Origin: Macrostomum lignano
Lineage: Eukaryota
Assembly (NCBI GenBank): GCA_002269645.1
Contig: NIVC01001054.1
Span: 268,656-332,655, forward strand
Direction of reading: 5' to 3'
DNA length: 64,000 nucleotides
The position numbers and the translations under genes are program-made. A model generated the notes under the pieces. The model ran no database searches. It was given only the letters and a program-made list of their open reading frames with translations, and was not told the DNA's origin. This document shows, one piece after another, positions 870-52,200 of the stretch (the stretch's first letter is position 1; every line of letters starts with the position of its first letter).

Positions 870-1090
<221 letters not shown>

Positions 1091-2328: not shown

Positions 2329-3452
2329 CTCCTATTGAAGGCCTCTAGACAGCAACAGGCAAGACACATATATACACTTCAAGTGTTTAGTGTCTAAACG
2401 CCCACTACATCCAGACCGCAATTCTGGGAACAAAATAAAAATTTTAGCTAATGCCACTTGTGAGTATTTATAACTTCGGACTTATGAAATAAAAAACAAT
2501 AAGAAAATGAAACCTTGACATATCAACTACGTATCAATAAAATACAGCAGAGTAACATGCTAAATTAAATAATTGGTAATCTTCACAAACCCATATCAAA
2601 TGTAATAATTGATTTTGTGATGATGTACCATCAGTGTTCACTCTGCAACAGCTTTCAATCCTTAACTCTGTATGCGACAATCCGAAGATTGGGCGATGCT
2701 ATTTAAACCATGCAGTAATTATTTTCCTGTCGTAAAATATTGCTGACAAGGTGAAATATGGTCTACAGACATAAATTCGCTAAGAGGAGTGTATTGATTT
2801 CAATACATGGAGCCTTATTAATTTTGGCACCGGAAGGGAAGCCTAAATAAGAGCCAGGAAGCACGCTTGATGCGCAAGAAGGCGCAATTCGTCCAAGGCA
2901 TGAGTCAGATCAGGGGTCAGCAATTTCCGGCCCGCAAAGCCTCTCTATCCGGCCCCCTCAGGTGCTTTTTAAACTTTACAATAGCAATCCGGCCTGCTCG
3001 TCTCTTTTCAGCTCTGCTTTTCTTTCTCCTCTCTTCTCTCCTCTTTTGTTTCCTCTCGGACGGATGCGGCACGACAATCAGCTTCTCGTGCTCATTGAAC
3101 TGGTCTTAAACGTGCTCTACACGTTTCTATGTAGAAAATATATTAATAAATAAGTTTTATGAAATTAGGCAAACAGAGAGGCCTGAATATGAAAATAGCG
3201 TGCACTCAGCAAGGAACCTTGACATAGTGTATCAAGCGCGCGTTTGAGCAAAGCACTCGAAAAAGAGGAATGTTGCCAGTTTCAGGTAAATAACCCGAAA
3301 TTGAGCCCTGGATCCCAAATACTGTACAATCCAACTCTGTATTTGTGAGCAAAGCCAGAGCTCTATAAGTGTATAAAAGTTTGACAGCAAAAGGCAACAA
3401 AAATTGTTCCAACGAAAAACTTCGCAAGTCCCTATACGTGAGGTATTTAAAT

Positions 3453-5219
3453 ATGGCGCACGACCTCGCAGCTCACAGCCGATCGCTGTCCTCAGCCATG
3501 GCGACTGCCGGGTTTCGCTCAACAAACGCAGCGGTGCAGAGCGGCCTCGCAATGGCAGCTGAGGAGCTGGGCCGACTGCTGGCTAAAAGCTGCCACATCT
3601 TTGGCAGCTACGCTGACGGCTGGGGCTCCAACCTGTGCTGCATCAATGGAGACGTCGCTCCAGACTCCGACATCGACGTGACGTACATCATGACAGACGC
3701 GAGCCAGCAAATCCACATTCACCCGCAAGTCGCTGACGGACAGCGGGCCGAATTTCGACACAACGACTGCCAGCTGACTGAGCCTGCGGAGTACGAGGAC
3801 GGGCACGTCAAGGCGCGCGTTCGCAGTAAGGAAATTCTCGCTATAATATCATACTAATGCAATAGATATGAAATTTAGATATGTACAGAAACGAAATTTA
3901 TCATCTACATGTGTCCTGAAAATGCAGTTTTAGCGCCGAATATCGCATTGGAAGTGTCGCGGATGTTGCCTGCAATCGACCTGATTTTGGCGCATTCCTG
4001 CTGCGGCTACCCTCACATCGAGCTGCTGCGGCCCGGATACAGGACTTGCATTTCCGATGACATCATGAGGGCGCTCAGAGAAGAGGTGCTGGGCGAGACG
4101 CCAAGGTGCCACGCCGTCAGCAGTGCGCCGCCCGGTCTAGAGGGCAGCCGACTTCGAGTGAGCACAACCCTGCTGGAAAGGTCCGTCATGCAGCATCTCA
4201 CCACCGTGCAGGGTCAGTTCTTCATCCTCGTCAAGTTCCTCATCAAGAGGGTGATCGGCAGCCGAGTGAGCGGTCTGAAGACGTACGTTGGCAAAAACTT
4301 GCTGTTCTACATGCTCGACGAGACACCGGCGAAGGACTGGAAGTCGGACAACCTGCTGGCGCTGGTGCAGCAGTCGTTGGACATTCTCGTGGCAATGATG
4401 GAGAGCTCAGACTCCGAGGACGCCTGCATGAGACATTTTTTCTTGCGTGACGCCAGAGTGTTCTTCAAGCGAGAGCACGACTCAAAATCGAGGATTGTAG
4501 CAGCCGTCCGTCAGTCAGCAGACAACCTGCTCAGCGACCTGAAACCGTTCAGAGAGTCTCTGCCTAAATTTGAGGTCAACGTGATTCTCCTTTCGTTTCT
4601 CTCTTACTACCTTCTAGCAGTAGAGTTACTGGAATGCAGTGATTTCAGCTTGACAAAATACGCTTCCACAATGCAGACGGCAACTGAGCTTTGGTTAAGC
4701 ATCAGGAGTGAAGCTCCGGTCGGGTCTCGGTCTGGCAGATTGACTCAGCTTTTGTCGGACGTCGAGCGCCAGATTCCAGACAGCGCTCAGGTCGGCAAAG
4801 CCTACCTCAGAGCCGCTGCTCTCTTCAAAATGGGTCAGCTTGTCACACCAGAGCTGGAGGAGGCGGCAGGTGCATCTCTGGGCTATATTCGGTGTCCGGA
4901 GGGCGACGACAACTCCCTGACGGTGGCTTCGGCCAAGTCGCTGGCTGTGGACAAGCTTGTGCAGACTCGCTGCCTGGGTGTCACAGCAGCAAACGGCCAA
5001 ATAGTCGACTGCCCGAAGCTGGTTAATGAAATCGGGCCGGTTGTGTCTTTGTTTGAGAAGCACCTGTGCGGCTTCAAAGTGACGAAGCAGCAAATGATTC
5101 TGGCTTTGGCTTCCGGCTCCCTTTGCGCAAGACTCTGGATGAGCAATGTGAGTGCACAAGAGATGGGGGGTCGCTTGTTTATTATTGGGAAAGGAAATGA
5201 CCTCTATTCACTCTTTTGA
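3453..5219 (+). CDS. cGAS-like receptor / Mab-21 family nucleotidyltransferase. Exons about 3453-3825 and 3928(or 3934)-5219; about 550 aa
   Basis: NTase motif FGSYADG...SDIDVTY, third acidic residue in AIDLILA, and Mab-21 C-lobe motifs RVSTTLLERSVM, LKTYVGKNLLFYML, W...NL and HFFL. Phase-1 intron GTAAG (3826) ... CAG (3927) joins the two ORFs in frame. An upstream exon is possible. Confidence 0.85.
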
Positions 5220-6159
5220 GCACCCAATTCCAAGTTAGTAGCAAAAATGAAATAGAAACGTTAGGGGAGAAAATCTTTTAACAAGTGCTGCAGTCATCAG
5301 AATGCAGGTGTCTATGCCATCGCACCTGGCTGACATGATTTACGGTATAGCTAATTATATATTAGCAGGTAAATGCAAGCTTCAAACTATATGGTTGAAT
5401 AGAAAACTCCTGGATGCTAGCGATTGCGCAATTATGTCTAAATCCAATTTGCACTGGTCCAAATCGAACACAAAGCACCATGCTCCGTTCTCCGCTTCAA
5501 GGCAACCGAGTACAACTCAAGGAACACTATAGTGGGCAGGCATCTGCGTCACTTGGATATTTTTAGGCAGATCAGCGTTCAAAGACAAAGCGATCGGCAG
5601 CAAGACGCTCAAGAAGGAAGAGGGGACAAGCGAGGAGACCCAGACGACGAGTCACAAGGCGATTTGAATGACAAGAATGCCCAACAATGAAACCATATAT
5701 ATACAGCGTACTGAAAAGTATCTCTATCTAAAGTGAATTCCTGAATCTGCGAAATTCAGATGTTAAAGCCCTCACCGGGCTCACCCTAGTTAACAACAGC
5801 AAGCTGTATTATTCTAGACTTTTCTAATTGTAGAAATTTTCGATGAGATATCTGTTTAACCCAGTCCGAGCTGTTTGTCATGGAAAATTGATTTGGATGC
5901 GTAGCTCTTTACTTATTTCGACTGCTGATTAGCACTTCAAATTTGTCTTCGTAATGAACATGCAGCTGCCTAATCATTAAGTGAAGACGCTTCTAAAAAA
6001 GACTGTGAATCATATTTCAAACGGTAAAAATAACAACACGACAACATGGTAATTCTGATTGGGCAGATATGAGTCTGTTTTCAAACGCTTCAAAATGAAT
6101 TCTTAAATTGACAGAGGCGTAAGCGTAAGCAGGAATTCTAATTGGAGGGTGCCGCAACC

Positions 6160-6262
6160 CGGTCTCTTAGTGGGCGCCCCTGTCTCTTGGTATGCGCCCC
6201 TGTCTCTTGGTGTGCGCCCCTGTCTCTTGGTGTGCGCCCCTGTCTCTTGATGGGCGGCACCG
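6160..6262 (+). repeat. 19-bp GC-rich minisatellite (GCGCCCCTGTCTCTTGGT(G/A)T), about 5 copies
   Basis: Direct reading; a related array lies at 8792-8895. Confidence 0.85.
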
Positions 6263-6686: not shown

Positions 6687-8190
6687 ATGTCTGTCGCGTA
6701 TTTCGACATAAAACTTTACTTGCTTAGTGGCGCATACGACGTCCCTGCGTCTTTGACAACAACTAAGGAGAAGAACAACTTCAAAAGCAAGGTTCGGCAG
6801 AAGCGCGCAACTTCAGGCACGAGGGCCAGCAGCTGTTCTATCAGCTCTCAGCTCGGGATGATAGTCAGAAGAAGCGCCATAGGTCAAGTGAGTGTCGCCT
6901 GGAGGTGGAAGATCAAGAAGAACGGTGTCGATTAATTTAAGAATCACACCTCTGTGACTGGAGGAGCTCATCAGGGGATAAAGTCCACCCTATCGAAGCT
7001 GCAGGGGCGATTTCATCGGGACGGCATGACAAAATCTGTGCAAGATTACCGTACGTTCAGAATTGCGCCGTCTGCCAGCGCAACAAGAGGGCCGTGGCGA
7101 ACGAACCCCAGTTGACGCCAATTTTAATTCCGTTGATGGCCGAACGAGTATTCGGTTTTGTCTGTGTTGACTACGTCAGGTTCGAGTCATCTTCGAAAGG
7201 TGATTGATTAATAGATTAATAGTTTTTGTGGTTACATGTATCAAATCAAACTAGCATACTCTCATTCATTTTAATGTAAACTTAGCAACACAATGCTCCA
7301 CTGGGAGTCAATACCTGCTGACAATTTGCTGCAAATTTACCAAATTTGCATTGGCGTCAGCGCACAGCAGGAACGACGCACAGACAGCCGCAAAACAGCT
7401 GTACAAGGCCTTCTGCGTCTTCTCCCGGCCCGACATCTTGCTGACCGATCAGGGACAAGGGTTCAACAACAACCTGAAGAGCTGCTTGTCTGAGAGGATT
7501 GATAAGAGACGAACCTCTGCTTATCCCCCCCCCAGGTTAGTGAGGTGAATATTTTTTCCCTTACATGCTCTCTCAATTATAAGTCTTAATTCGAATAAAT
7601 TCGTATTCGATATTAAATAACTGACAATGCTCTTTCAGACCAACGGTCAGTGCGAGCGCCTCAACCAGAGCTTAGTCGCAGCTCTGCGCAAAATTTGCGA
7701 CCAGGACTCTGACTCTGCGGCATGGGATGATTATGTCGATGGCGCAGTTCTGGCGTACAACAGTCGCGTGCACTCGACAGCTGGCGTCTTGCCTTACAAG
7801 GCCGTGTTCGGCAACGAACCAAGACTTCCCCATGACAGCATCGGACCAGCAGACGCTGCCATGGTCGGTGACGTCACGATTCGTCATGTAGAGAGAAAGG
7901 CAGAATCGCGTGGGCGGACCATTGAGTTGATGCGTCGACGCATCCGTCGGGCGCAGCAAGCTATGCAGCAGTACCATCAGCAGCGTCTGGCGTCTGCCAG
8001 CAGCCTCAGCATCAAAACCGGAGACAAGGTGCTGCTGCGGAACTTTGACCGCGACGATCGGAAACGCGGCAAACTGTAGACACCATGGTGCGCCAAGGTT
8101 TACACGGTCGAACGTGTCCTAAGCAACAACTAAGGGAGATTTACAGCGATCAATGGCCGCCACCGGAAAAAATACCACGAATAGGTGATC
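6687..8190 (+). mobile_element. Degenerate intron-containing Gypsy-like integrase (Ginger-type DNA transposase)
   Basis: N-terminal YLLSGAY...KRA-NF...LFY, HHCC zinc motif (ESH...GAHQGIKST...CAVCQ), catalytic CVD / TDQG / NGQCER, and a GPY/F-like tail (KL*TPWCAKVYTV). Introns 7200-7285 and 7536-7638 keep the frame. Frameshifts and stops in the N-terminus. No RT or gag nearby. Confidence 0.8.
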
Positions 8191-8791
8191 TACAGAATTT
8201 GAATTTCTATTATTTGACAGTAGTTTTAGGCTTCTAATTAAAAAAATCGAAATGCTTCGTATGAACTAGAGACTAAAAAAGGTTTTTAACTTGACTCACT
8301 AGAAACTTTGTGCTTTAGACCAATGTCAACTTAATGGGAGATTTTGAAAGCTCGTATAGGACTTAATCGATAAGGAAATTTGATAATTCAACATATGCTC
8401 GTAATTTTTTGTGTATGTTTGCAAAATGTGCAGGATTTATCTAAAGGACAGGCTAAATTAGCTATTTACGGTTAATATATATTTCACATTATGCCTTATA
8501 ACATTATAATGTCCATTGACTAATTTTGTGTACGAGTACTTCATTCAGTTCTGGATTGTTGTTGTCTTTTTGTTGCAATGTATACTTTGCAGTAATAATT
8601 TATTGTCTACTCGCAATGTTGTCGGAATATTTTAAGACGAATAAAATAAGGCATAAGATAGTTTCTGCTCTGTGAGAGAATTCAAAATGACCGAATGAGT
8701 TTGGATAACTGAAAAGTAATTTGGCCAATACGTTTGTCGTCTTATTTCATTCAGCCGAATAAAACAAGGCAGAATTTTTTTAAGACGTGAC

Positions 8792-8895
8792 ACCGGTCTC
8801 TTGGTGGGCGCCCCTGTCTTTTAGTGGGCGCCCCCGTCTCTTGTTGAGAGGCCCCGGTCTCTCGGTGGGCGGCCCTGTCTTTTGGTGGGCGTCAC
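8792..8895 (+). repeat. GC-rich minisatellite related to 6160-6262
   Basis: CCGGTCTCTTGGTGGGCGCCCCTGTC-type units in the same orientation. Confidence 0.8.
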
Positions 8896-9597: not shown

Positions 9598-11937
9598 ATG
9601 CAGCAGCAAACTACGCCGGATGCGTATGCCTACAATGCTCAGCAGCAGCAGGTGCAGCAGCAGCAGCAGCAGCAGCAGCAGGTGCAGCAGCAGGCATTGC
9701 AGATGCCACCTGCACTGCAGTACTTGGCCTCTCTCGATCAGATTCTAATCAAGCAACAGAAGGAAATGATCGAAAGTGAGTTGATATGCGATAATTGGCA
9801 ACAGGTGTGAACCCAGCCGCTATTAATGTGAACACTTGGTAAAAAAGCAAAAAAAAATATTTTAGATCTTCTATCACAGACTACAAAAAGCATTTAGCGA
9901 ATGCCAGATACTAGAGGGGTTGCAGCCTAGTAGTCAGAGCGTCGGACTCACGACTTAAAAGTTGGGAGTTCGATTCCCGATCCCACTGGAACAATTTGTG
10001 TCCCTGAGTAAAGCACTTAACTCTGCACTGCTTCAGTTCACCCAGCTGTAAAATGGGTGCCAGCATTAGCTGGGGTAATTGAGGGTGTGTGTGGCGACCC
10101 CCCAGTCCTTGGACTGAACAGTCGTACGCAGCCTTCAAATGCGCCACGCAATAGCTGCGGCTGAGCTGTCAGTTGCACATTTGGCCCAATTAGGGCAGGT
10201 GTAATCAATAATAGTTATTATTATTTTTATACTAAATCATCCTGTTAATATTATATAAGTGAAACTATATGTCGTTAAAACTTAATATCATCAAATTGCA
10301 ATTTCAACGAAAGTTCTTATCGGCTGGGAGACCGCCAACAAATATATCGTGCTCAACAATGTCGGTCAGCAGGTGTTCTTTGCCAAAGAGGGTGAGTTTA
10401 TACAGATAACTAGATATGCAAGCCATCAGTCAGTTACATGTAAATATATCTAATAGTCAGTCAGCCAATAGTCACACGACAAACCTCCCAGTCCAAACTT
10501 CATGTCACAAAAATTATCAATTGAAGCTAGTGGGTTTGAACGCGGGAGTGCTGCCATAAGTCGACATATCATTTGCACTGACTGAAGTTACACGTTCTTA
10601 CTTGTACTTTGACGTAGCTACACGGCGCGCATTCTGCAATTCCGGAATTGAACAAAAGTGTCAATGAGGTGCTGAAAGAATCTCCAACTTCACACACACA
10701 AAAGAATTATCAAGCATCAATCGTCAGTTCAAGCCTCACCCTCCCTCCAGATTCCAGCACCTGCGATCGTCAGTGCCTCGGCGCCCAGCGCCCGTTCGAG
10801 ATGCTGGTGACTGACAACACAGGCCAGGAGGTGATCCACATCAGCCGGCCCTACAAGTGCATGTGCTACGGCCAGTGCTTCTCCTGCGCAAAATGCTGCC
10901 TGGACAAAGTCACCGTCGAGGCACCGCCAGGCAGAATGGTTGGTACGGTCACGCAGGTGTACGAAGGGTGCAGCGCGAACTACACGATCCAGGATGCCCA
11001 GGGCAACACGGTGCTGCTGATCCGAGGGCCCAGCTACTGCGCATGCCACTGCCCTGGCGATGACATACCGTTCGCGGTTAGTGACTTTCTTTTCTGTAAT
11101 GCGTACATGAACGAGTATCGCTGATAAACAATCGCGACCGATTAAAAATGCGAAAAGTTTAGTACTTCCGGCTGAGCTGGAACAGGATGTATTCTTAGAA
11201 ATTTACCCAACCTGATTGACACCACCTTGACTAACGTGACGAAAGTATACATTGACAAAAGTACATTTCTACTTTTGCACTATTTAACTACACAGCTAAT
11301 GACTACGGACGGCAATAACGAGATCGGCAAGGTCTCTAGGCAGTGGTCGAACCTACTGCAGGAGTACTTCACGGATGCCGACAACTTTGGTATTACGTTC
11401 CCTATGGACCTGCATGTTGACATCAAGGCCACAATTCTCGGAGCCTGCTTTCTCATCGTGAGTAGATTTTATCTTTTGTGGATAAATTTGCGCAAAAATT
11501 CTGGGTGTGTTGAGGTGGTGGGTGCAGTTAGTGGCGGGCGCAGTGGGTGGTGGGTGCAGTGGGGTGGTGGGTGCAGTGGGGTGGTGGGTGCAGTGGGGTG
11601 GTGGGTGCAGTGGGGTGGTGGGTGCAGTGGGGTGGTGGGTGCAGTGGGGCGGTGGGTGCAGTGGGATGGTGGGTGCGGTGAGGTGGTGGGTGCAGTGAGG
11701 GGGTGGGTGCAGTGGGGTGGTGGGTGCAGTGGGGTGGTGGGTGCAGTGGGGTGGTGGGTGCAGTGGGGTGGTGGGTGCGGTGAGGTGGTGGATGCAGTGG
11801 AGTGGTGGGCGCATTCATGCGGATGTTGCGTCTAATATTTTCATTTGAATTAAAAAAACTCCCGCACACACTATGGTCAACCCCCGTTTCAATTTCAGGA
11901 CTTCATGTACTTTGAGAGGTCGGGAAATGAGCACTAA
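9598..11937 (+). CDS. PLSCR: Phospholipid scramblase. Exons 9598-9775, 10314-10391, 10751-11076, 11296-11457, 11899-11937
   Basis: LQYLASLDQILIKQQKE, GWETANKY, CDRQCLGAQRPFEM, Cys-rich CMCYGQCFSCAKCC, FTDADNFGITFPMDL, ILGACFLIDFMYFE. All five exons join in phase with GT-AG boundaries. Confidence 0.93.
9915..10228 (+). mobile_element. tRNA-derived SINE with a CORE/MIR-like central domain (scramblase intron 1)
   Basis: A-box-like GCAGCCTAGTAG, B-box GAGTTCGATTCC, CORE-like GTGTCCCTGAGTAAAGCACTTAACTCT...CAGCTGTAAAATGGG, and a TTA-repeat tail. Confidence 0.75.
11510..11812. repeat. 17-bp minisatellite GGTGCAGTGGGGTGGTG in scramblase intron 4
   Basis: About 17 tandem copies read directly. Confidence 0.95.
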
Positions 11938-49241: not shown

Positions 49242-52200
49242 ATGAGCAGCAAAGCTAGCAAGAAAGAAATGGAAGATAATTGCCAGCATATTAAATGTGT
49301 GCCAAGAAAAGGTTTCCCACCACTTCTACTTAAGCCACAGGCTGTGGGTCCTATGCAAAAGCGGCAGAAGTCTTGCAATGATTTTCAACAGATTGAATAT
49401 CAGCAAAGCAATCATTACATGATGCAGAAACAGCCATGGAAGCAGAAGTTTTCTTATCAGCAAGTGCAAAAGCAGCAATGCCATAATCCGCAAGCGCAGA
49501 AGCAGCAATGCTCTAATCCGCAAGCGCAGAAGCAGCAATGCCCTAATCCGCAAGTGCAGAAGCAGAAGTTTCCCGATCAGCAAGCGCAGAAGCAGAAGTT
49601 TCCTGATCAGCAAGCGCAGAAGCAGAAGTTTCCTGATCAGCAAGCGCAGAAGCAGACGTTTCCTAATCAGCAAGCGCAGAAGCAGAAGTTTCCTGATCAG
49701 CAAGCGCAGAAGCAGAAGTTTCCTGATCAGCAAGCGCAGAAGCAGAAGTTTCCTGATCAGCAAGCGCAGAAGCAGAAGTTTCCTGATCAGCAAGCGCAGA
49801 AGCAGAAGTTTCCTGATCAGCAAGCGCAAAAGAAGCAATTTTATAGTAGGCAGCGTCGACCATATTGGTTGCCTCAAAAGCACGACCCCGTAAGTCCCTG
49901 CGTCGTGCAGCAAGACGAGAAGCAGTCCGAACTTGCTGATGAGAAGGAACTGCACCGCTACAAGCAGTGCTCGCTACCGCTCCCAGGTGAACTGGACGAA
50001 TTATTTCATAGCAGCGTCAATGCAGACAGCCAATTTCAACTATTGCCTGGGCGCAATTTGTGCAATTGCGCCGCGGCCAGACACAAGCTCGTTGGCTCCT
50101 GTCCCGTCTGCGGCCGAATCCAATGCTCCCAGGAGGGTGCCGGGCCCTGCCTGTTCTGCAGCTGTCCTCCCGGGCTGGAGCCAATACCGCCCGAAGCTGT
50201 GGTCACCCGCGGCCTCCGTCCGCTTGATGCCCCATCGCCAAGGCTCGTCTTCGAGCTGCCGACAGCGTCAGCTCCGAGCGGCTCTTCTACTGCCAGCTCA
50301 AGCTCAAACTTGGCCAGGCTTCGTAGATTGAGCCTCCGTCTGCAGGACGGCCATCTGCTGCGCCTTCGCGATGACGGCCTCTGCCTGCGAGCCTGGGAGC
50401 CGTGGGCTTCGCTTGTTCTGCAGACCCCTGCGCCAGAGCCTTCTTGGACTGGCCAGCTGCCCAGCAGTGCTTGGCCACTGCATCGGGGCTGCATGTGGAT
50501 CGCCGTACCTACCGAATGCGAGGTGTGAATAATTTAATGATCTCTAGTTATTAAGATTGTTGGGAAGCTTTTAAAATTTAGGGGAGGGGATTCGAGACGG
50601 TGAAACTCAAGATAAAGGGCGGGAAACTACGGTTCTTCGAAAATTTCGAAAACTTCGAAAGCCTGTAGTTTATGACCTGTGTAGTTCATGGCCTTGTAGT
50701 TTATGGCCTTGTAGTTTATGCCCTTGTAGTTTATGGCCTGTGTAGTTTATGGGCTGTGTAGTTTATGACCTGTGTAGTTCATGGCCTTGTAGTTTATGGT
50801 CTTGTAGTTTATGCCCTTGTAGTTTATGGTCTGTGTAGTTTATGGGCCTTGTAGTTTATGGTCTTTGTAGTTTATGGCCTTGTAGTTTTTGGTCTTTGTA
50901 GTTTATGGTCTTTGTAGTTTATGCCCTTGTAGTTTATGGTCTTTGTAGTTTATGGTCTTTGTAGTTTATGGTCTTTGTAGTTTATGCCCTTGTAGTTTAT
51001 GGTCTTTGTAGTTTATGGCCTTGTAGTTTATGCCCTTGTAGTTTATGGTCTGTGTAGTTTATGGTCTGTGTAGTTTATGGTCTTTGTAGTTTATGGTCTG
51101 TGTAGTTTATGGGCCTTGTAGTTTATGGTCTGTGTAGTTTATGGGCCTTGTAGTTTATGGCCTGTGTAGTTTATGGCTTTGTAGTTTATGGCCTGTGTAG
51201 TTTATGGGCCTTGTAGTTTATGGCCTGTGTAGTTTATGGCTTTGTAGTTTATGGCCTGTGTAGTTTATGGGCTGTGTAGTTTATGGTCTTTGTAGTTTAT
51301 GGCCTTGTAGTTTATGGGCTGTGTAGTTTATGGTCTTTGTAGTTTATGGCCTTGTAGTTTTTGGTCTGTGTAGTTTATGGGCCTTGTAGTTTATGGTCTT
51401 TGTAGTTTATGGCCTTGTAGTTTATGGTTTTTGTAGTTTATGGCCTTGTAGTTTATGGCCTGTGTAGTTTATGGCCTTGTAGTTTATGGGCCTTGTAGTT
51501 TATGGTCTTTGTAGTTTATGGGCCTTGTAGTTTATGGTCTTTGTAGTTTATGGCCTTGTAGTTTATGGTTTTTGTAGTTTATGGCCTTGTAGTTTATGGC
51601 CTGTGTAGTTTATGGCCTTGTAGTTTATGGGCCTTGTAGTTTATGGTCTTTGTAGTTTATGGCCTTGTAGTTTTTGGTCTGTGTAGTTTATGGCCTTGTA
51701 GATTATGGTCTTTGTAGTTTATGGCCTTGCAGTTTATGGTTTTTGTAGTTTATGGCCTTGTAGTTTATGGCCTTGTAGTTTATGGCCTGTGTAGTTTATG
51801 GCCTTGTAGTGTATGGTCTTTGTAGTTTATGGTCTTTGTAGTTCATGGTCTGTGTAGTTTATGGGCCTTGTAGTTTATGGTCTTTGTTTGTAGTTTACGG
51901 CCTCGTAGTTTATGGTCTTTGTAGTTTATGGCCTTTGTAGTTTATGGCCCTTGTAGTTTATGGCCTGTGTAGTTTATGGCCTGTGTAGTTTTTGGCCCTT
52001 GTAGTTTATGGCCTTTGTAGTTTATGGTCTTTGTAGTTTATGGCCTTGTAGTTTTTGGTCTGTGTAGTTTATGGGCCTTGTAGTTTATGGTCTTTGTAGT
52101 TTATGGCCTTGTAGTTTATGGTTTTTGTAGTTTATGGCCTTGTAGTTTATGGCCTGTGTAGTTTATGGCTTTGTAGTTTATGGCCTGTGTAGTTTATGGG

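What the first reader, a model, noticed from the sequence alone, without database searches (positions are those of the whole stretch)
3453..5219. Intact cGAS-like receptor with a ~240-aa unassigned C-terminal extension
Seen: an uninterrupted two-exon ORF with G-S, D-x-D and a third Asp (AIDL) all present, followed by the Mab-21 C-lobe. After the HFFL motif about 240 more residues follow that I cannot assign (helical, KAYLRAAALFKMG, scattered Cys). Established: cGLRs make cyclic dinucleotides when they sense nucleic acid, and lophotrochozoan cGLRs are mostly uncharacterised. Inference: this may be an active immune cyclase fused to a new sensor or effector module.
Basis: partly seen in the sequence, partly recalled or inferred. 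Interest (0 to 1): 0.72.

Follow-up and report, generated by a model that had tools for sequence, protein, structure and literature searches.

The report
Flatworm cGAS-like enzyme, unassigned helical tail
This is an intact gene for a cGAS-like immune-type enzyme from the flatworm Macrostomum lignano; it belongs to a large family that was already catalogued, and its extra C-terminal domain is shared by the whole family and still has no known fold or function.

Summary
The gene is real and intact, but it has three exons, not two: 3453-3825, 3928-5147 and 5502-5690 (593 aa).

All homologues found are from Macrostomum lignano. The best are 97%, 93% and 83% identical, and there are dozens of paralogues, many with N-terminal ankyrin repeats.

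The evidence for a cGAS-like fold:
- An AlphaFold2 model (pTM 0.82) matches only cGAS, cGLR, MAB21L1 and MB21D2 structures.
- The C-lobe aligns to cGAS/cGLRs by profile (94.5% probability).
- GS, D73-x-D75, D142 and the cGAS substrate-contact residues are conserved across the family.

The tail (aa 321-531) is a helical domain present in every family member. It has no Pfam, PDB-sequence or Foldseek match. About 60 disordered residues follow it.

Li et al. 2023 already listed this family as cGLRs and put five members, one a 42%-identical paralogue with the same tail, through their biochemical screen. None is among the 15 enzymes they marked as active.

The protein is acidic (pI 6.1), which argues against nucleic-acid sensing.

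Verdict: a new member of a known kind. The tail is undescribed but is not a new fusion.

The parts
3453..3825 (+). Exon 1: aa 1-124 plus the first base of codon 125. Holds the N-terminal spine helix and the start of the nucleotidyltransferase N-lobe.
   Evidence: This is the first ATG of the open frame. Residues upstream of M16 (SLSSAM) are conserved in paralogues, which favours M1 as the start.
3826..3927 (+). Intron 1: 102 nt, GTAAGG...TGCAG, phase 1.
   Evidence: An in-frame stop lies inside it, since the ORF 3369..3857 ends there. The spliced junction matches P0001 and the paralogues.
3928..5147 (+). Exon 2: aa 125-531. Holds the rest of the N-lobe, the C-lobe helix bundle and the folded tail.
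5148..5501 (+). Intron 2: 354 nt, GTGAGT...TTCAAG, phase 0.
   Evidence: The homologous gene models P0001, P0002, P0003 and P0194 splice here. A paralogous locus keeps the same layout.
5502..5690 (+). Exon 3: aa 532-593 plus the TGA stop at 5688-5690. A charged, predicted-disordered C-terminus.
   Evidence: tblastn finds it as a separate block. pLDDT is below 50 for the equivalent residues 517-575 of P0001. GRAVY is -1.7. It is 63% identical at protein level in the paralogous locus L001.
3603..3608 (+). G51-S52 of the nucleotidyltransferase GS motif (IFGS).
   Evidence: S52 is invariant and G51 nearly invariant. It sits at the end of strand 1 in the model. A weak local hhalign places it on human cGAS G212-S213.
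3669..3677 (+). D73-I-D75, the metal-binding DxD.
   Evidence: Invariant in the family alignments, and DhDh is present in 55 of 55 family sequences. It sits at the start of a strand with pLDDT of about 88.
3978..3980 (+). D142, the third catalytic carboxylate (AIDL).
   Evidence: Nearly invariant; one paralogue has E. It lies in a strand of the model (P0001 E125-134). It is separated from D75 by 66 residues, and the gap between the two motifs (64 residues) lies within the X50-90 of the published motif.
4155..4178 (+). R201-V-S203-T-T205-L-L-E208, the strand that aligns to human cGAS R376-L-S378-F-S380-H-I-E383 (substrate contacts).
   Evidence: hhalign of the family profile against a cGAS/cGLR profile gives 94.5% probability and E 8.4e-8. 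These residues are nearly invariant.
4284..4295 (+). Y244-V-G-K247, which aligns to human cGAS Y436 and K439.
   Evidence: Both residues are invariant in the family.
4077..4514 (+). C-lobe helix bundle (aa 175-320). The Pfam Mab-21_C match is at 4260-4502, and the HFFL motif is inside it.
   Evidence: Sp-cGLR1 (8gjy) aligns up to its residue 365 of 376, so a canonical cGLR would end at about aa 330 here.
4515..5147 (+). Family-specific C-terminal domain (aa 321-531). It is mostly helical with two small hairpins and matches no known family or fold.
   Evidence: AlphaFold2 models. Foldseek against PDB and BFVD finds nothing with E below 0.6. Pfam finds nothing consistent. A tail profile finds only M. 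lignano Mab-21 proteins and nothing in PDB sequences.
4773..4835 (+). The best-conserved element of the tail: IPDSAQVGKAYLRAAALFKMG (family consensus LPDCARTxRExLxALAxLKFG), a helix-turn-helix hairpin.
   Evidence: P408 and L418 are nearly invariant. Helices flank the PD turn in both models.

Best explanation
The locus is a three-exon gene of Macrostomum lignano, or a very close relative. It encodes one member of a large, lineage-specific expansion of cGAS-like receptors (Mab-21-fold nucleotidyltransferases).

Shown:
- The N-terminal 320 residues adopt the two-lobed cGAS/cGLR architecture.
- The catalytic residues are intact: GS, D73-x-D75 and D142.
- The cGAS substrate-contact equivalents are conserved: R201, S203, T205, E208, Y244 and K247.
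- A folded helical domain of about 210 residues follows. It is found only in this family and in all of its members. About 60 disordered, charged residues come after it.

Inferred:
- Like other cGLRs, the enzyme is held inactive until a ligand binds. It then condenses two NTPs into a cyclic or linear nucleotide second messenger.
- The core is acidic and the core charge varies widely between paralogues, so the activating ligand is more likely a protein or another non-nucleic-acid molecule than dsRNA or dsDNA.
- The tail, like the ankyrin repeats of the longer paralogues, most likely serves as a binding or regulatory scaffold packed on the C-lobe, not as an enzymatic effector.
For: Origin and family:
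- All homologues are M. lignano proteins: 97%, 93% and 83% identical copies, and about 40%-identical paralogues with or without ankyrin repeats.

Fold:
- The AlphaFold2 model of the 97%-identical P0001 has pLDDT 78.9 and pTM 0.82.
- The top 50 Foldseek PDB hits are all cGAS, Cv-cGLR1, Sp-cGLR1, MAB21L1 or MB21D2, with E from 1e-6 to 1e-4 and target-normalised TM of 0.40-0.53.

Sequence homology of the C-lobe:
- hhalign against cGAS/cGLRs gives 94.5% probability and E 8.4e-8, and aligns the substrate-contact residues.
- A family profile hits Sp-cGLR1 (8gjy) at E 0.0076.
- Pfam Mab-21_C matches 21 of 21 members.

Catalytic residues:
- They are invariant or nearly invariant.
- GS and DhDh are present in 55 of 55 family sequences.
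- They sit on the expected strands of the model.

Prior cataloguing:
- Li et al. 2023 list five M. lignano proteins of this family in their 140-enzyme cGLR screen. One is PAA57558.1, which contains the whole of P0006, a paralogue 42% identical to this protein with the same tail.

Tail:
- It is conserved through the family but has only hydrophobic or proline near-invariants.
- dN/dS against the paralogous locus is about 0.39 for the tail and about 0.53 for the core.
- In the full-length model the tail has higher confidence than when modelled alone, and the overall pTM is 0.82. This is consistent with the tail packing on the core.

Charge:
- pI is 6.1 for the whole protein and 6.35 for the core. 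Li et al. report pI above 8.5 for nucleic-acid sensors and propose non-nucleic-acid ligands for acidic cGLRs.
Against: - No activity is known. The five screened relatives are not among the 15 enzymes marked as active.
- The residue before GS is F, not the Q or T of the published motif.
- N-lobe sequence homology to cGAS is not detectable (hhalign E 0.07; Pfam PF03281 matches 0 of 21). The N-lobe assignment therefore rests on fold and motifs.
- I could not read model coordinates, so the geometry of the triad and the tail-core contacts are unverified.
- dN/dS values of 0.4-0.5 come from few substitutions, and the comparison copy has frame shifts in its assembly.
- Whether M. lignano has STING or another receptor for the product was not testable. 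Li et al. state that most platyhelminths lack cGLR signalling.
- Transcription is inferred only from gene models.
Confidence: 0.6

Rival explanations
1. It is a Mab-21-fold protein that keeps the motifs but does not signal. It would act as a scaffold or adaptor, as proposed for MAB21L1 or MID51, with the helical tail and the ankyrin repeats of paralogues as its real working parts.
For: - MAB21L1 structures are among the Foldseek hits.
- The five screened relatives were not marked active.
- The protein is acidic and shows no sign of a nucleic-acid-binding surface.
- Q/T is replaced by F or V before GS throughout the family.
Against: - GS, DhDh and the third Asp are retained in essentially every one of more than 50 diverged paralogues, down to 25% identity. 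So are the equivalents of cGAS R376, S378, E383, Y436 and K439. That is hard to explain without catalysis or at least nucleotide binding.
- Failure in a screen that used only nucleic-acid ligands does not show inactivity.
Confidence: 0.2
2. It is an active nucleotidyltransferase with chemistry other than cyclic dinucleotide synthesis. Examples would be OAS-like linear 2'-5' oligonucleotides, or nucleotidylation of a protein or RNA bound by the tail.
For: - The N-lobe is too diverged to align to cGAS.
- One paralogue weakly hits the generic NTP_transf_2 and poly(A)-polymerase palm models.
- The GS-to-DxD spacing is 20 residues, at the upper limit of the published motif, against 11 in cGAS.
Against: - The best structural matches are cGAS and cGLRs, not OAS or poly(A) polymerases.
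- The C-lobe residues that position the two nucleotides in cGAS are conserved.
Confidence: 0.12
3. This particular copy is a silent or decaying recent duplicate in a highly duplicated genome. Its open frame would then be a leftover.
For: - There are several 83-97% identical copies.
- A paralogous locus shows frame shifts in its assembly.
- dN/dS is fairly high: 0.39-0.53, and about 1.1 in exon 3.
Against: - All 593 codons are open across three exons with canonical splice sites.
- All catalytic and structural invariants are intact.
- dN/dS is still below 1 in the folded parts.
- The frame shifts in the other copy may be assembly errors, because the matching gene model P0003 is intact.
Confidence: 0.08

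Closest known systems
Macrostomum lignano cGLRs catalogued and screened by Li et al. 2023 (PAA57558.1, PAA86972.1, PAA45980.1, PAA93208.1, PAA68676.1; PMC9980059, Table S3 samples 89-93)
   Same: - Same species and same family.
- They share the GS(F/Y)(A/S)(D/E)(G/A)W(G/A) ... D-h-D ... HFF core signature and the same tail with the LPDCA...L(K/R)AL element.
- PAA57558.1 contains the whole of P0006, which is 42% identical to this protein over 88% of its length and has no ankyrin repeats.
   Different: - This copy and its 83-97% identical siblings form a separate subclade with a shorter distal tail and a charged, disordered exon-3 end.
- At least three of the screened proteins (PAA86972.1, PAA45980.1, PAA68676.1) carry N-terminal ankyrin repeats.
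- None of the five is marked as an active enzyme, so no ligand or product can be transferred to this protein.
Sp-cGLR1 (Stylophora pistillata, PDB 8gjy) and Cv-cGLR1 (Crassostrea virginica, PDB 8gjw), characterised invertebrate cGLRs
   Same: - Two-lobed cGAS-like fold: Foldseek E 7e-5 and 1e-5, target-normalised TM 0.50-0.51.
- C-lobe sequence similarity to 8gjy at E 0.0076.
- Catalytic motif order is the same.
   Different: - They are basic proteins that sense double-stranded nucleic acid. This protein has pI 6.1.
- The 8gjy chain ends about 11 residues after the position equal to aa 319 here, and the 8gjw chain is only 346 residues. This protein continues for 273 more residues.
- Sequence identity is only 12-15%.
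Vertebrate cGAS
   Same: - Fold: Foldseek E about 2e-6.
- GS / (D/E)x(D/E) / D triad.
- Equivalents of R376, S378, S380 (T here), E383, Y436 and K439.
   Different: - No zinc-ribbon insertion. The cGAS segment KSKTCCENKEEKCCRKD has no counterpart in the alignment.
- Acidic rather than basic.
- 20 residues rather than 11 between GS and DxD.
- No disordered basic N-terminus. A helical C-terminal domain is added.
cGLR fusions to ankyrin or TPR repeats (Li et al. 2023, Fig. 1C)
   Same: The longer paralogues of this gene are ankyrin-cGLR fusions. The tail is helical and its weak Foldseek neighbours are mostly helical-repeat or helical-bundle proteins.
   Different: - This copy has no ankyrin repeats.
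- Its tail gives no TPR, ANK or other repeat hit, even at E up to 1.
- Li et al.'s domain table, as far as it is held, lists only Ank domains for the M. lignano entries it shows. The tail is not recorded there as a domain.

Membership tests
cGAS-like receptors (cGLR), criteria of Li et al. 2023 | Active-site motif: GS, then 8-20 residues, [DE]h[DE]h, then 50-90 residues, h[DE]h | tested here: met
   G51-S52, 20 residues, D73-I-D75-V, 64 residues, I141-D142-L143. These residues are invariant or nearly invariant in the family. The 20-residue spacing is at the upper limit.
cGAS-like receptors (cGLR), criteria of Li et al. 2023 | Q or T immediately before GS (h[QT]GS) | tested here: not met
   The sequence is IFGS, and the strict regular expression fails. 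The whole family has F or V at this position. Even so, Li et al. accepted family members with FGS, MGS or LGS into their list, so this position is evidently not applied strictly.
cGAS-like receptors (cGLR), criteria of Li et al. 2023 | Sequence homology across both the nucleotidyltransferase core and the C-terminal helix bundle | tested here: inconclusive
   C-lobe: hhalign 94.5% probability, E 8.4e-8; Pfam Mab-21_C at 23.9 bits against a cut-off of 24.1 for this protein, and 21 of 21 members matched. N-lobe: not significant, with hhalign E 0.07 and PF03281 matching 0 of 21.
cGAS-like receptors (cGLR), criteria of Li et al. 2023 | Predicted structure homologous to known cGLR / CD-NTase enzymes | tested here: met
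   AlphaFold2 model with pTM 0.82. The top 50 Foldseek PDB hits are all cGAS, cGLR, MAB21L1 or MB21D2, with about 350-410 aligned columns for most and target-normalised TM of 0.40-0.53. The model is of P0001, a 97%-identical sibling, because the spliced window protein was not accepted by the tool.
cGAS-like receptors (cGLR), criteria of Li et al. 2023 | Ligand-dependent synthesis of a nucleotide second messenger | not testable with these tools
   This needs biochemistry. Five relatives were screened by Li et al. and are not among the 15 marked active.
Nucleic-acid-sensing cGLRs (cGAS, Dm-cGLR1, Cv-cGLR1, Sp-cGLR1 type) | High isoelectric point (above 8.5) and a long basic ligand groove | tested here: not met
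   pI is 6.09 for the full protein, 6.35 for the core and 5.35 for the N-lobe. The threshold is from Li et al.. The groove itself could not be inspected, because no coordinates were available.
Pfam Mab-21 family (PF03281 + PF20266) | Scores above the gathering thresholds of both models | tested here: not met
   PF20266 scores 23.9 bits against 24.1. PF03281 gives no hit at E up to 10 for this protein or at E up to 0.01 for any of 21 members. UniProt nevertheless names these proteins 'Mab-21 domain-containing'.
TPR / ankyrin / other helical-repeat domains (for the tail) | A match to a repeat profile, or a repeat-protein structural match | tested here: not met
   Eight diverse tails gave no repeat family at E up to 1. 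Foldseek best E was 0.6 with TM about 0.2.
SLATT 2TM effector domain (for the tail) | SLATT_1 profile match and two transmembrane helices, conserved in relatives | tested here: not met
   E is 0.11-0.23, far below the cut-off, and the hit occurs only in this copy. The hydrophobic stretch at aa 341-359 carries prolines in paralogues and is modelled as a buried strand plus helix.

The most novel reading that the evidence does not exclude
The 210-residue helical tail is a previously undescribed, Macrostomum-specific sensor or gating domain. With it, this acidic cGLR clade would respond to a non-nucleic-acid ligand such as a protein. That would reveal a working and greatly expanded cGLR signalling system in a phylum otherwise reported to have lost it.
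Probability: 0.2. Interest if true: 0.65.

Novelty: new member of a known kind. Interest (0 to 1): 0.35.

Why it matters
Li et al. 2023 report that most flatworms lack cGLR signalling. Macrostomum lignano, a free-living laboratory model with RNAi and transgenesis, is an exception. It has dozens of cGLR-like genes, and all of them carry an extra C-terminal domain that nobody has described and that resembles no solved structure.

If these enzymes are active, they offer a tractable animal in which to look for non-nucleic-acid cGLR ligands and for a signalling route that may not use STING.

For this particular locus the practical gains are modest. They are a corrected three-exon gene model, the species assignment, and the recognition that the tail is a family trait, not a new fusion.

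Tried and rejected
1. SLATT_1 effector or transmembrane reading of aa 336-409. Rejected: E 0.11-0.23, seen only in this copy, prolines in paralogues, and modelled as a buried strand plus helix.
2. TPR or another repeat in the tail. No profile hit in eight tails and no structural match.
3. 'Terpenoid synthase', the automatic name of fragment P0190. The fragment is just a family tail with no DDxxD motif.
4. The exhaustive HMMER search of 1.84 billion representatives was wasted. Alignment A3 had ankyrin columns in more than half its rows, so 730,490 ankyrin proteins swamped the list. The only usable result is that the hits covering the Mab-21 plus tail region are M. lignano proteins; 10 of 10 looked up were. 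How far the family reaches outside Macrostomum therefore rests on three word-indexed searches and one metagenome scan. All were negative.
P0001 (97% identical, starting at M16) served as a proxy for the full-length model, and window:4506-5147 was used for the tail model.
6. hhalign on the N-lobe alone was not significant.
7. The search for related loci with the tail alignment failed because no stretch was conserved enough.
8. A search for paralogues inside the window found none.
9. Literature searches for flatworm cGLR work beyond Li et al. found nothing specific.
Full report
**1. What is in the sequence**

The region holds a long open frame on the + strand. The ATG at 3453 is the first in its frame. 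A GT..AG intron at 3826-3927 (102 nt, phase 1) joins ...HVKARVR to (I)LAPNIALEV in frame. An in-frame stop inside the intron shows that splicing is needed.

- G51-S52 at 3603-3608
- D73-I-D75 at 3669-3677
- A-I-D142-L, with the Asp at 3978-3980
- HFFL at aa 294
- KAYLRAAALFKMG at aa 415

The 3' end needs correcting. Close homologues end ...ARLWMSN-ATEYNSRNTIVGRHLRHLDIF.... The window encodes that continuation at 5502-5687, after a GTGAGT donor at 5148 and an AG acceptor at 5500-5501.

The gene is therefore 3453-3825 + 3928-5147 + 5502-5690, giving 593 aa. Four gene models (P0001, P0002, P0003, P0194) use this exon.

A paralogous locus from the NCBI M. lignano assembly (L001, contig NIVC01000517.1) has the same layout:
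- 87% nucleotide identity over 3248-5259
- 79.5% over 5354-5701
- the same 20-bp satellite downstream

Residues upstream of M16 (SLSSAM) are conserved in paralogues, which favours the 3453 start. The window holds only this one copy.

**2. Whose gene it is**

Every protein homologue found is from the free-living flatworm Macrostomum lignano. The closest are P0001 at 97%, P0002 at 93% and P0003 at 83% identity to the 593-aa protein. Dozens of paralogues lie at 25-45% identity. About half of them carry long N-terminal ankyrin-repeat arrays.

My one exhaustive HMMER search was spoiled. Ankyrin columns entered the profile, and 730,490 ankyrin proteins swamped the output. The hits that covered the Mab-21 plus tail region were M. 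lignano proteins; 10 of 10 looked up were. A pattern scan of JGI metagenome contigs found no relative. Within the reach of these searches, the family is specific to Macrostomum.

**3. The first 320 residues are a cGAS-like nucleotidyltransferase**

It is 97% identical and starts at M16. The model has mean pLDDT 78.9 and pTM 0.82. Its top 50 Foldseek PDB matches are all cGAS, Cv-cGLR1 (8gjw), Sp-cGLR1 (8gjy), MAB21L1 or MB21D2. E-values run from 1e-6 to 1e-4, most alignments span about 350-410 columns, and target-normalised TM is 0.40-0.53.

*Sequence.* Only the C-lobe is recognisable:
- Pfam Mab-21_C scores 23.9 bits against a cut-off of 24.1. All 21 family members scanned match it.
- A family profile hits Sp-cGLR1 at E 0.0076.
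- hhalign of the family against an alignment of human and mouse cGAS plus three cnidarian cGLRs gives 94.5% probability and E 8.4e-8 over aa 175-311. The reference sequences came from Li et al., Table S3.

That alignment pairs these residues with human cGAS:

| This protein | Human cGAS |
|---|---|
| R201 | R376 |
| S203 | S378 |
| T205 | S380 |
| E208 | E383 |
| Y244 | Y436 |
| K247 | K439 |

From my own knowledge of the cGAS structures, these cGAS residues are substrate contacts. All are invariant or nearly so in the flatworm family.

The N-lobe cannot be aligned significantly (E 0.07), and PF03281 gives no hit. Even so:
- GS and DhDh are present in 55 of 55 family sequences.
- D142 is nearly invariant.
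- In the model the three motifs sit at the end of strand 1, at the start of strand 2 and within a later strand, as in all Pol-beta-type transferases.

I could not read coordinates, so the geometry of the triad is untested.

**4. The tail**

Sp-cGLR1 aligns up to its residue 365 of 376 at the position equal to aa 319 here. A canonical cGLR would therefore stop near aa 330, whereas this protein continues to aa 593.

Residues 321-531 are predicted as a folded domain of about nine helices and two small hairpins. pLDDT is about 65-90 in the full-length model and averages 70 when the tail is modelled alone. Residues 532-593 (exon 3) are charged and disordered.

The tail matches nothing known:
- Pfam finds nothing consistent in eight diverse tails at E up to 1.
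- A tail profile finds nothing in PDB sequences.
- Foldseek finds nothing in PDB (best E 0.6, TM 0.23) or in BFVD.

A weak SLATT_1 hit (E 0.11-0.23) occurs only in this copy and is rejected.

A tail-only profile search of 5.8 billion proteins returned only M. lignano proteins of this same family; most are named Mab-21, and the rest are fragment gene models with unrelated automatic names. The tail is present in every family member, and its proximal 150 residues are the conserved part. The consensus elements are FHPF, LPDCARTxRExLxALAxLKFG and SRGIxCP.

The near-invariant positions in the tail are hydrophobic or proline (L336, P408, L418). That pattern points to a structural or binding role, not a catalytic one. 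The high pTM of the full-length model, and a tail strand adjacent in sequence to the C-lobe hairpin, suggest that the tail packs on the C-lobe. This is inference.

dN/dS against the paralogous locus is about 0.39 for the tail, 0.53 for the core and about 1.1 for exon 3. These values rest on few substitutions.

**5. What was already known**

Li et al. 2023 (PMC9980059) define cGLRs by three criteria: the active-site motif, homology across both lobes, and AlphaFold2 similarity. [quoted passage not shown]

Their Table S3 nevertheless lists five M. lignano proteins among the 140 enzymes screened (samples 89-93). Their sequences plainly belong to this family. Sample 91 (PAA57558.1) contains the whole of P0006, a paralogue 42% identical to this protein with the same tail.

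It is empty for all five. As far as the domain table is held, it gives only ankyrin domains for the M. lignano entries it shows.

So the family is known as candidate cGLRs and has been tested with nucleic-acid ligands without a reported product. Its tail has not been described.

**6. How it probably works**

*Shown:* a cGAS-like fold, intact catalytic and substrate-contact residues, and a family-specific helical domain.

*Inferred:* the enzyme makes a nucleotide second messenger when activated.

The activator is unlikely to be dsRNA or dsDNA. The pI is 6.1 overall and 6.35 for the core. Li et al. find pI above 8.5 for nucleic-acid sensors and propose non-nucleic-acid ligands for acidic cGLRs.

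Across the family the core pI ranges from 5.2 to 9.7 while the active site stays fixed. That is the pattern expected of receptors diversifying for different ligands. The tail, and the ankyrin arrays of the longer paralogues, are the obvious candidates for partner binding or gating.

The rivals are:
- a non-catalytic scaffold
- a transferase with other chemistry
- a silent duplicate

They are weighed in the Rival explanations section of this report.

**7. Verdict**

It is, however, one more member of a family that has already been catalogued and screened, and the tail is a family trait, not a new fusion.

Interest is moderate to low for this locus. It would rise if the family proved active with a non-nucleic-acid ligand.

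Noticed in passing
window 6158-6249 and 8796-8891; L001 10179-10828: A 20-bp tandem repeat (consensus about CCCTGTCTCTTGGTGTGCGC) lies roughly 470 bp downstream of the gene and again 2.6 kb further on. The same satellite, expanded to about 650 bp, follows the paralogous gene in contig NIVC01000517.1. The duplicated unit therefore spans gene plus satellite.
   Followed up: partly
L001 7271-9771 (NCBI GCA_002269645.1, NIVC01000517.1): The P0003-like paralogue in this assembly switches reading frame near 7962 and near 8700 relative to the intact gene model P0003, and only a 239-aa piece is annotated there. This is either an assembly indel error or a decaying copy.
   Followed up: partly
window 11227-11835 (+): An ORF with a scramblase domain (PF03803, E 1.8e-17). 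It is overlapped by a 17-bp tandem repeat at 11514-11813.
   Followed up: no
window 49242-50528 (+): A 428-aa ORF with a C2HC5 zinc finger (PF06221, E 6.8e-6), of the TRIP4/ASC-1 type.
   Followed up: no
window 873-979: A perfect (TC)53 microsatellite, followed by a CT-rich 21-bp repeat at 984-1043. A further CT-rich stretch lies at about 3000-3057, upstream of the gene.
   Followed up: no
proteins P0002, P0194, P0190 (M. lignano gene models): P0002 lacks aa 343-374 of exon 2. P0194 joins ...DCPKL directly to exon 3. These are either alternative splicing or model errors. P0190, a tail fragment, carries the automatic name 'Terpenoid synthase', which the sequence does not support.
   Followed up: partly
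M. lignano family as a whole (P0001-P0195): The core isoelectric point ranges from 5.2 to 9.7 among paralogues, while GS and DhDh are kept in 55 of 55. Some gene models contain two tandem cGLR cores (P0016, and possibly P0018 and P0020).
   Followed up: partly
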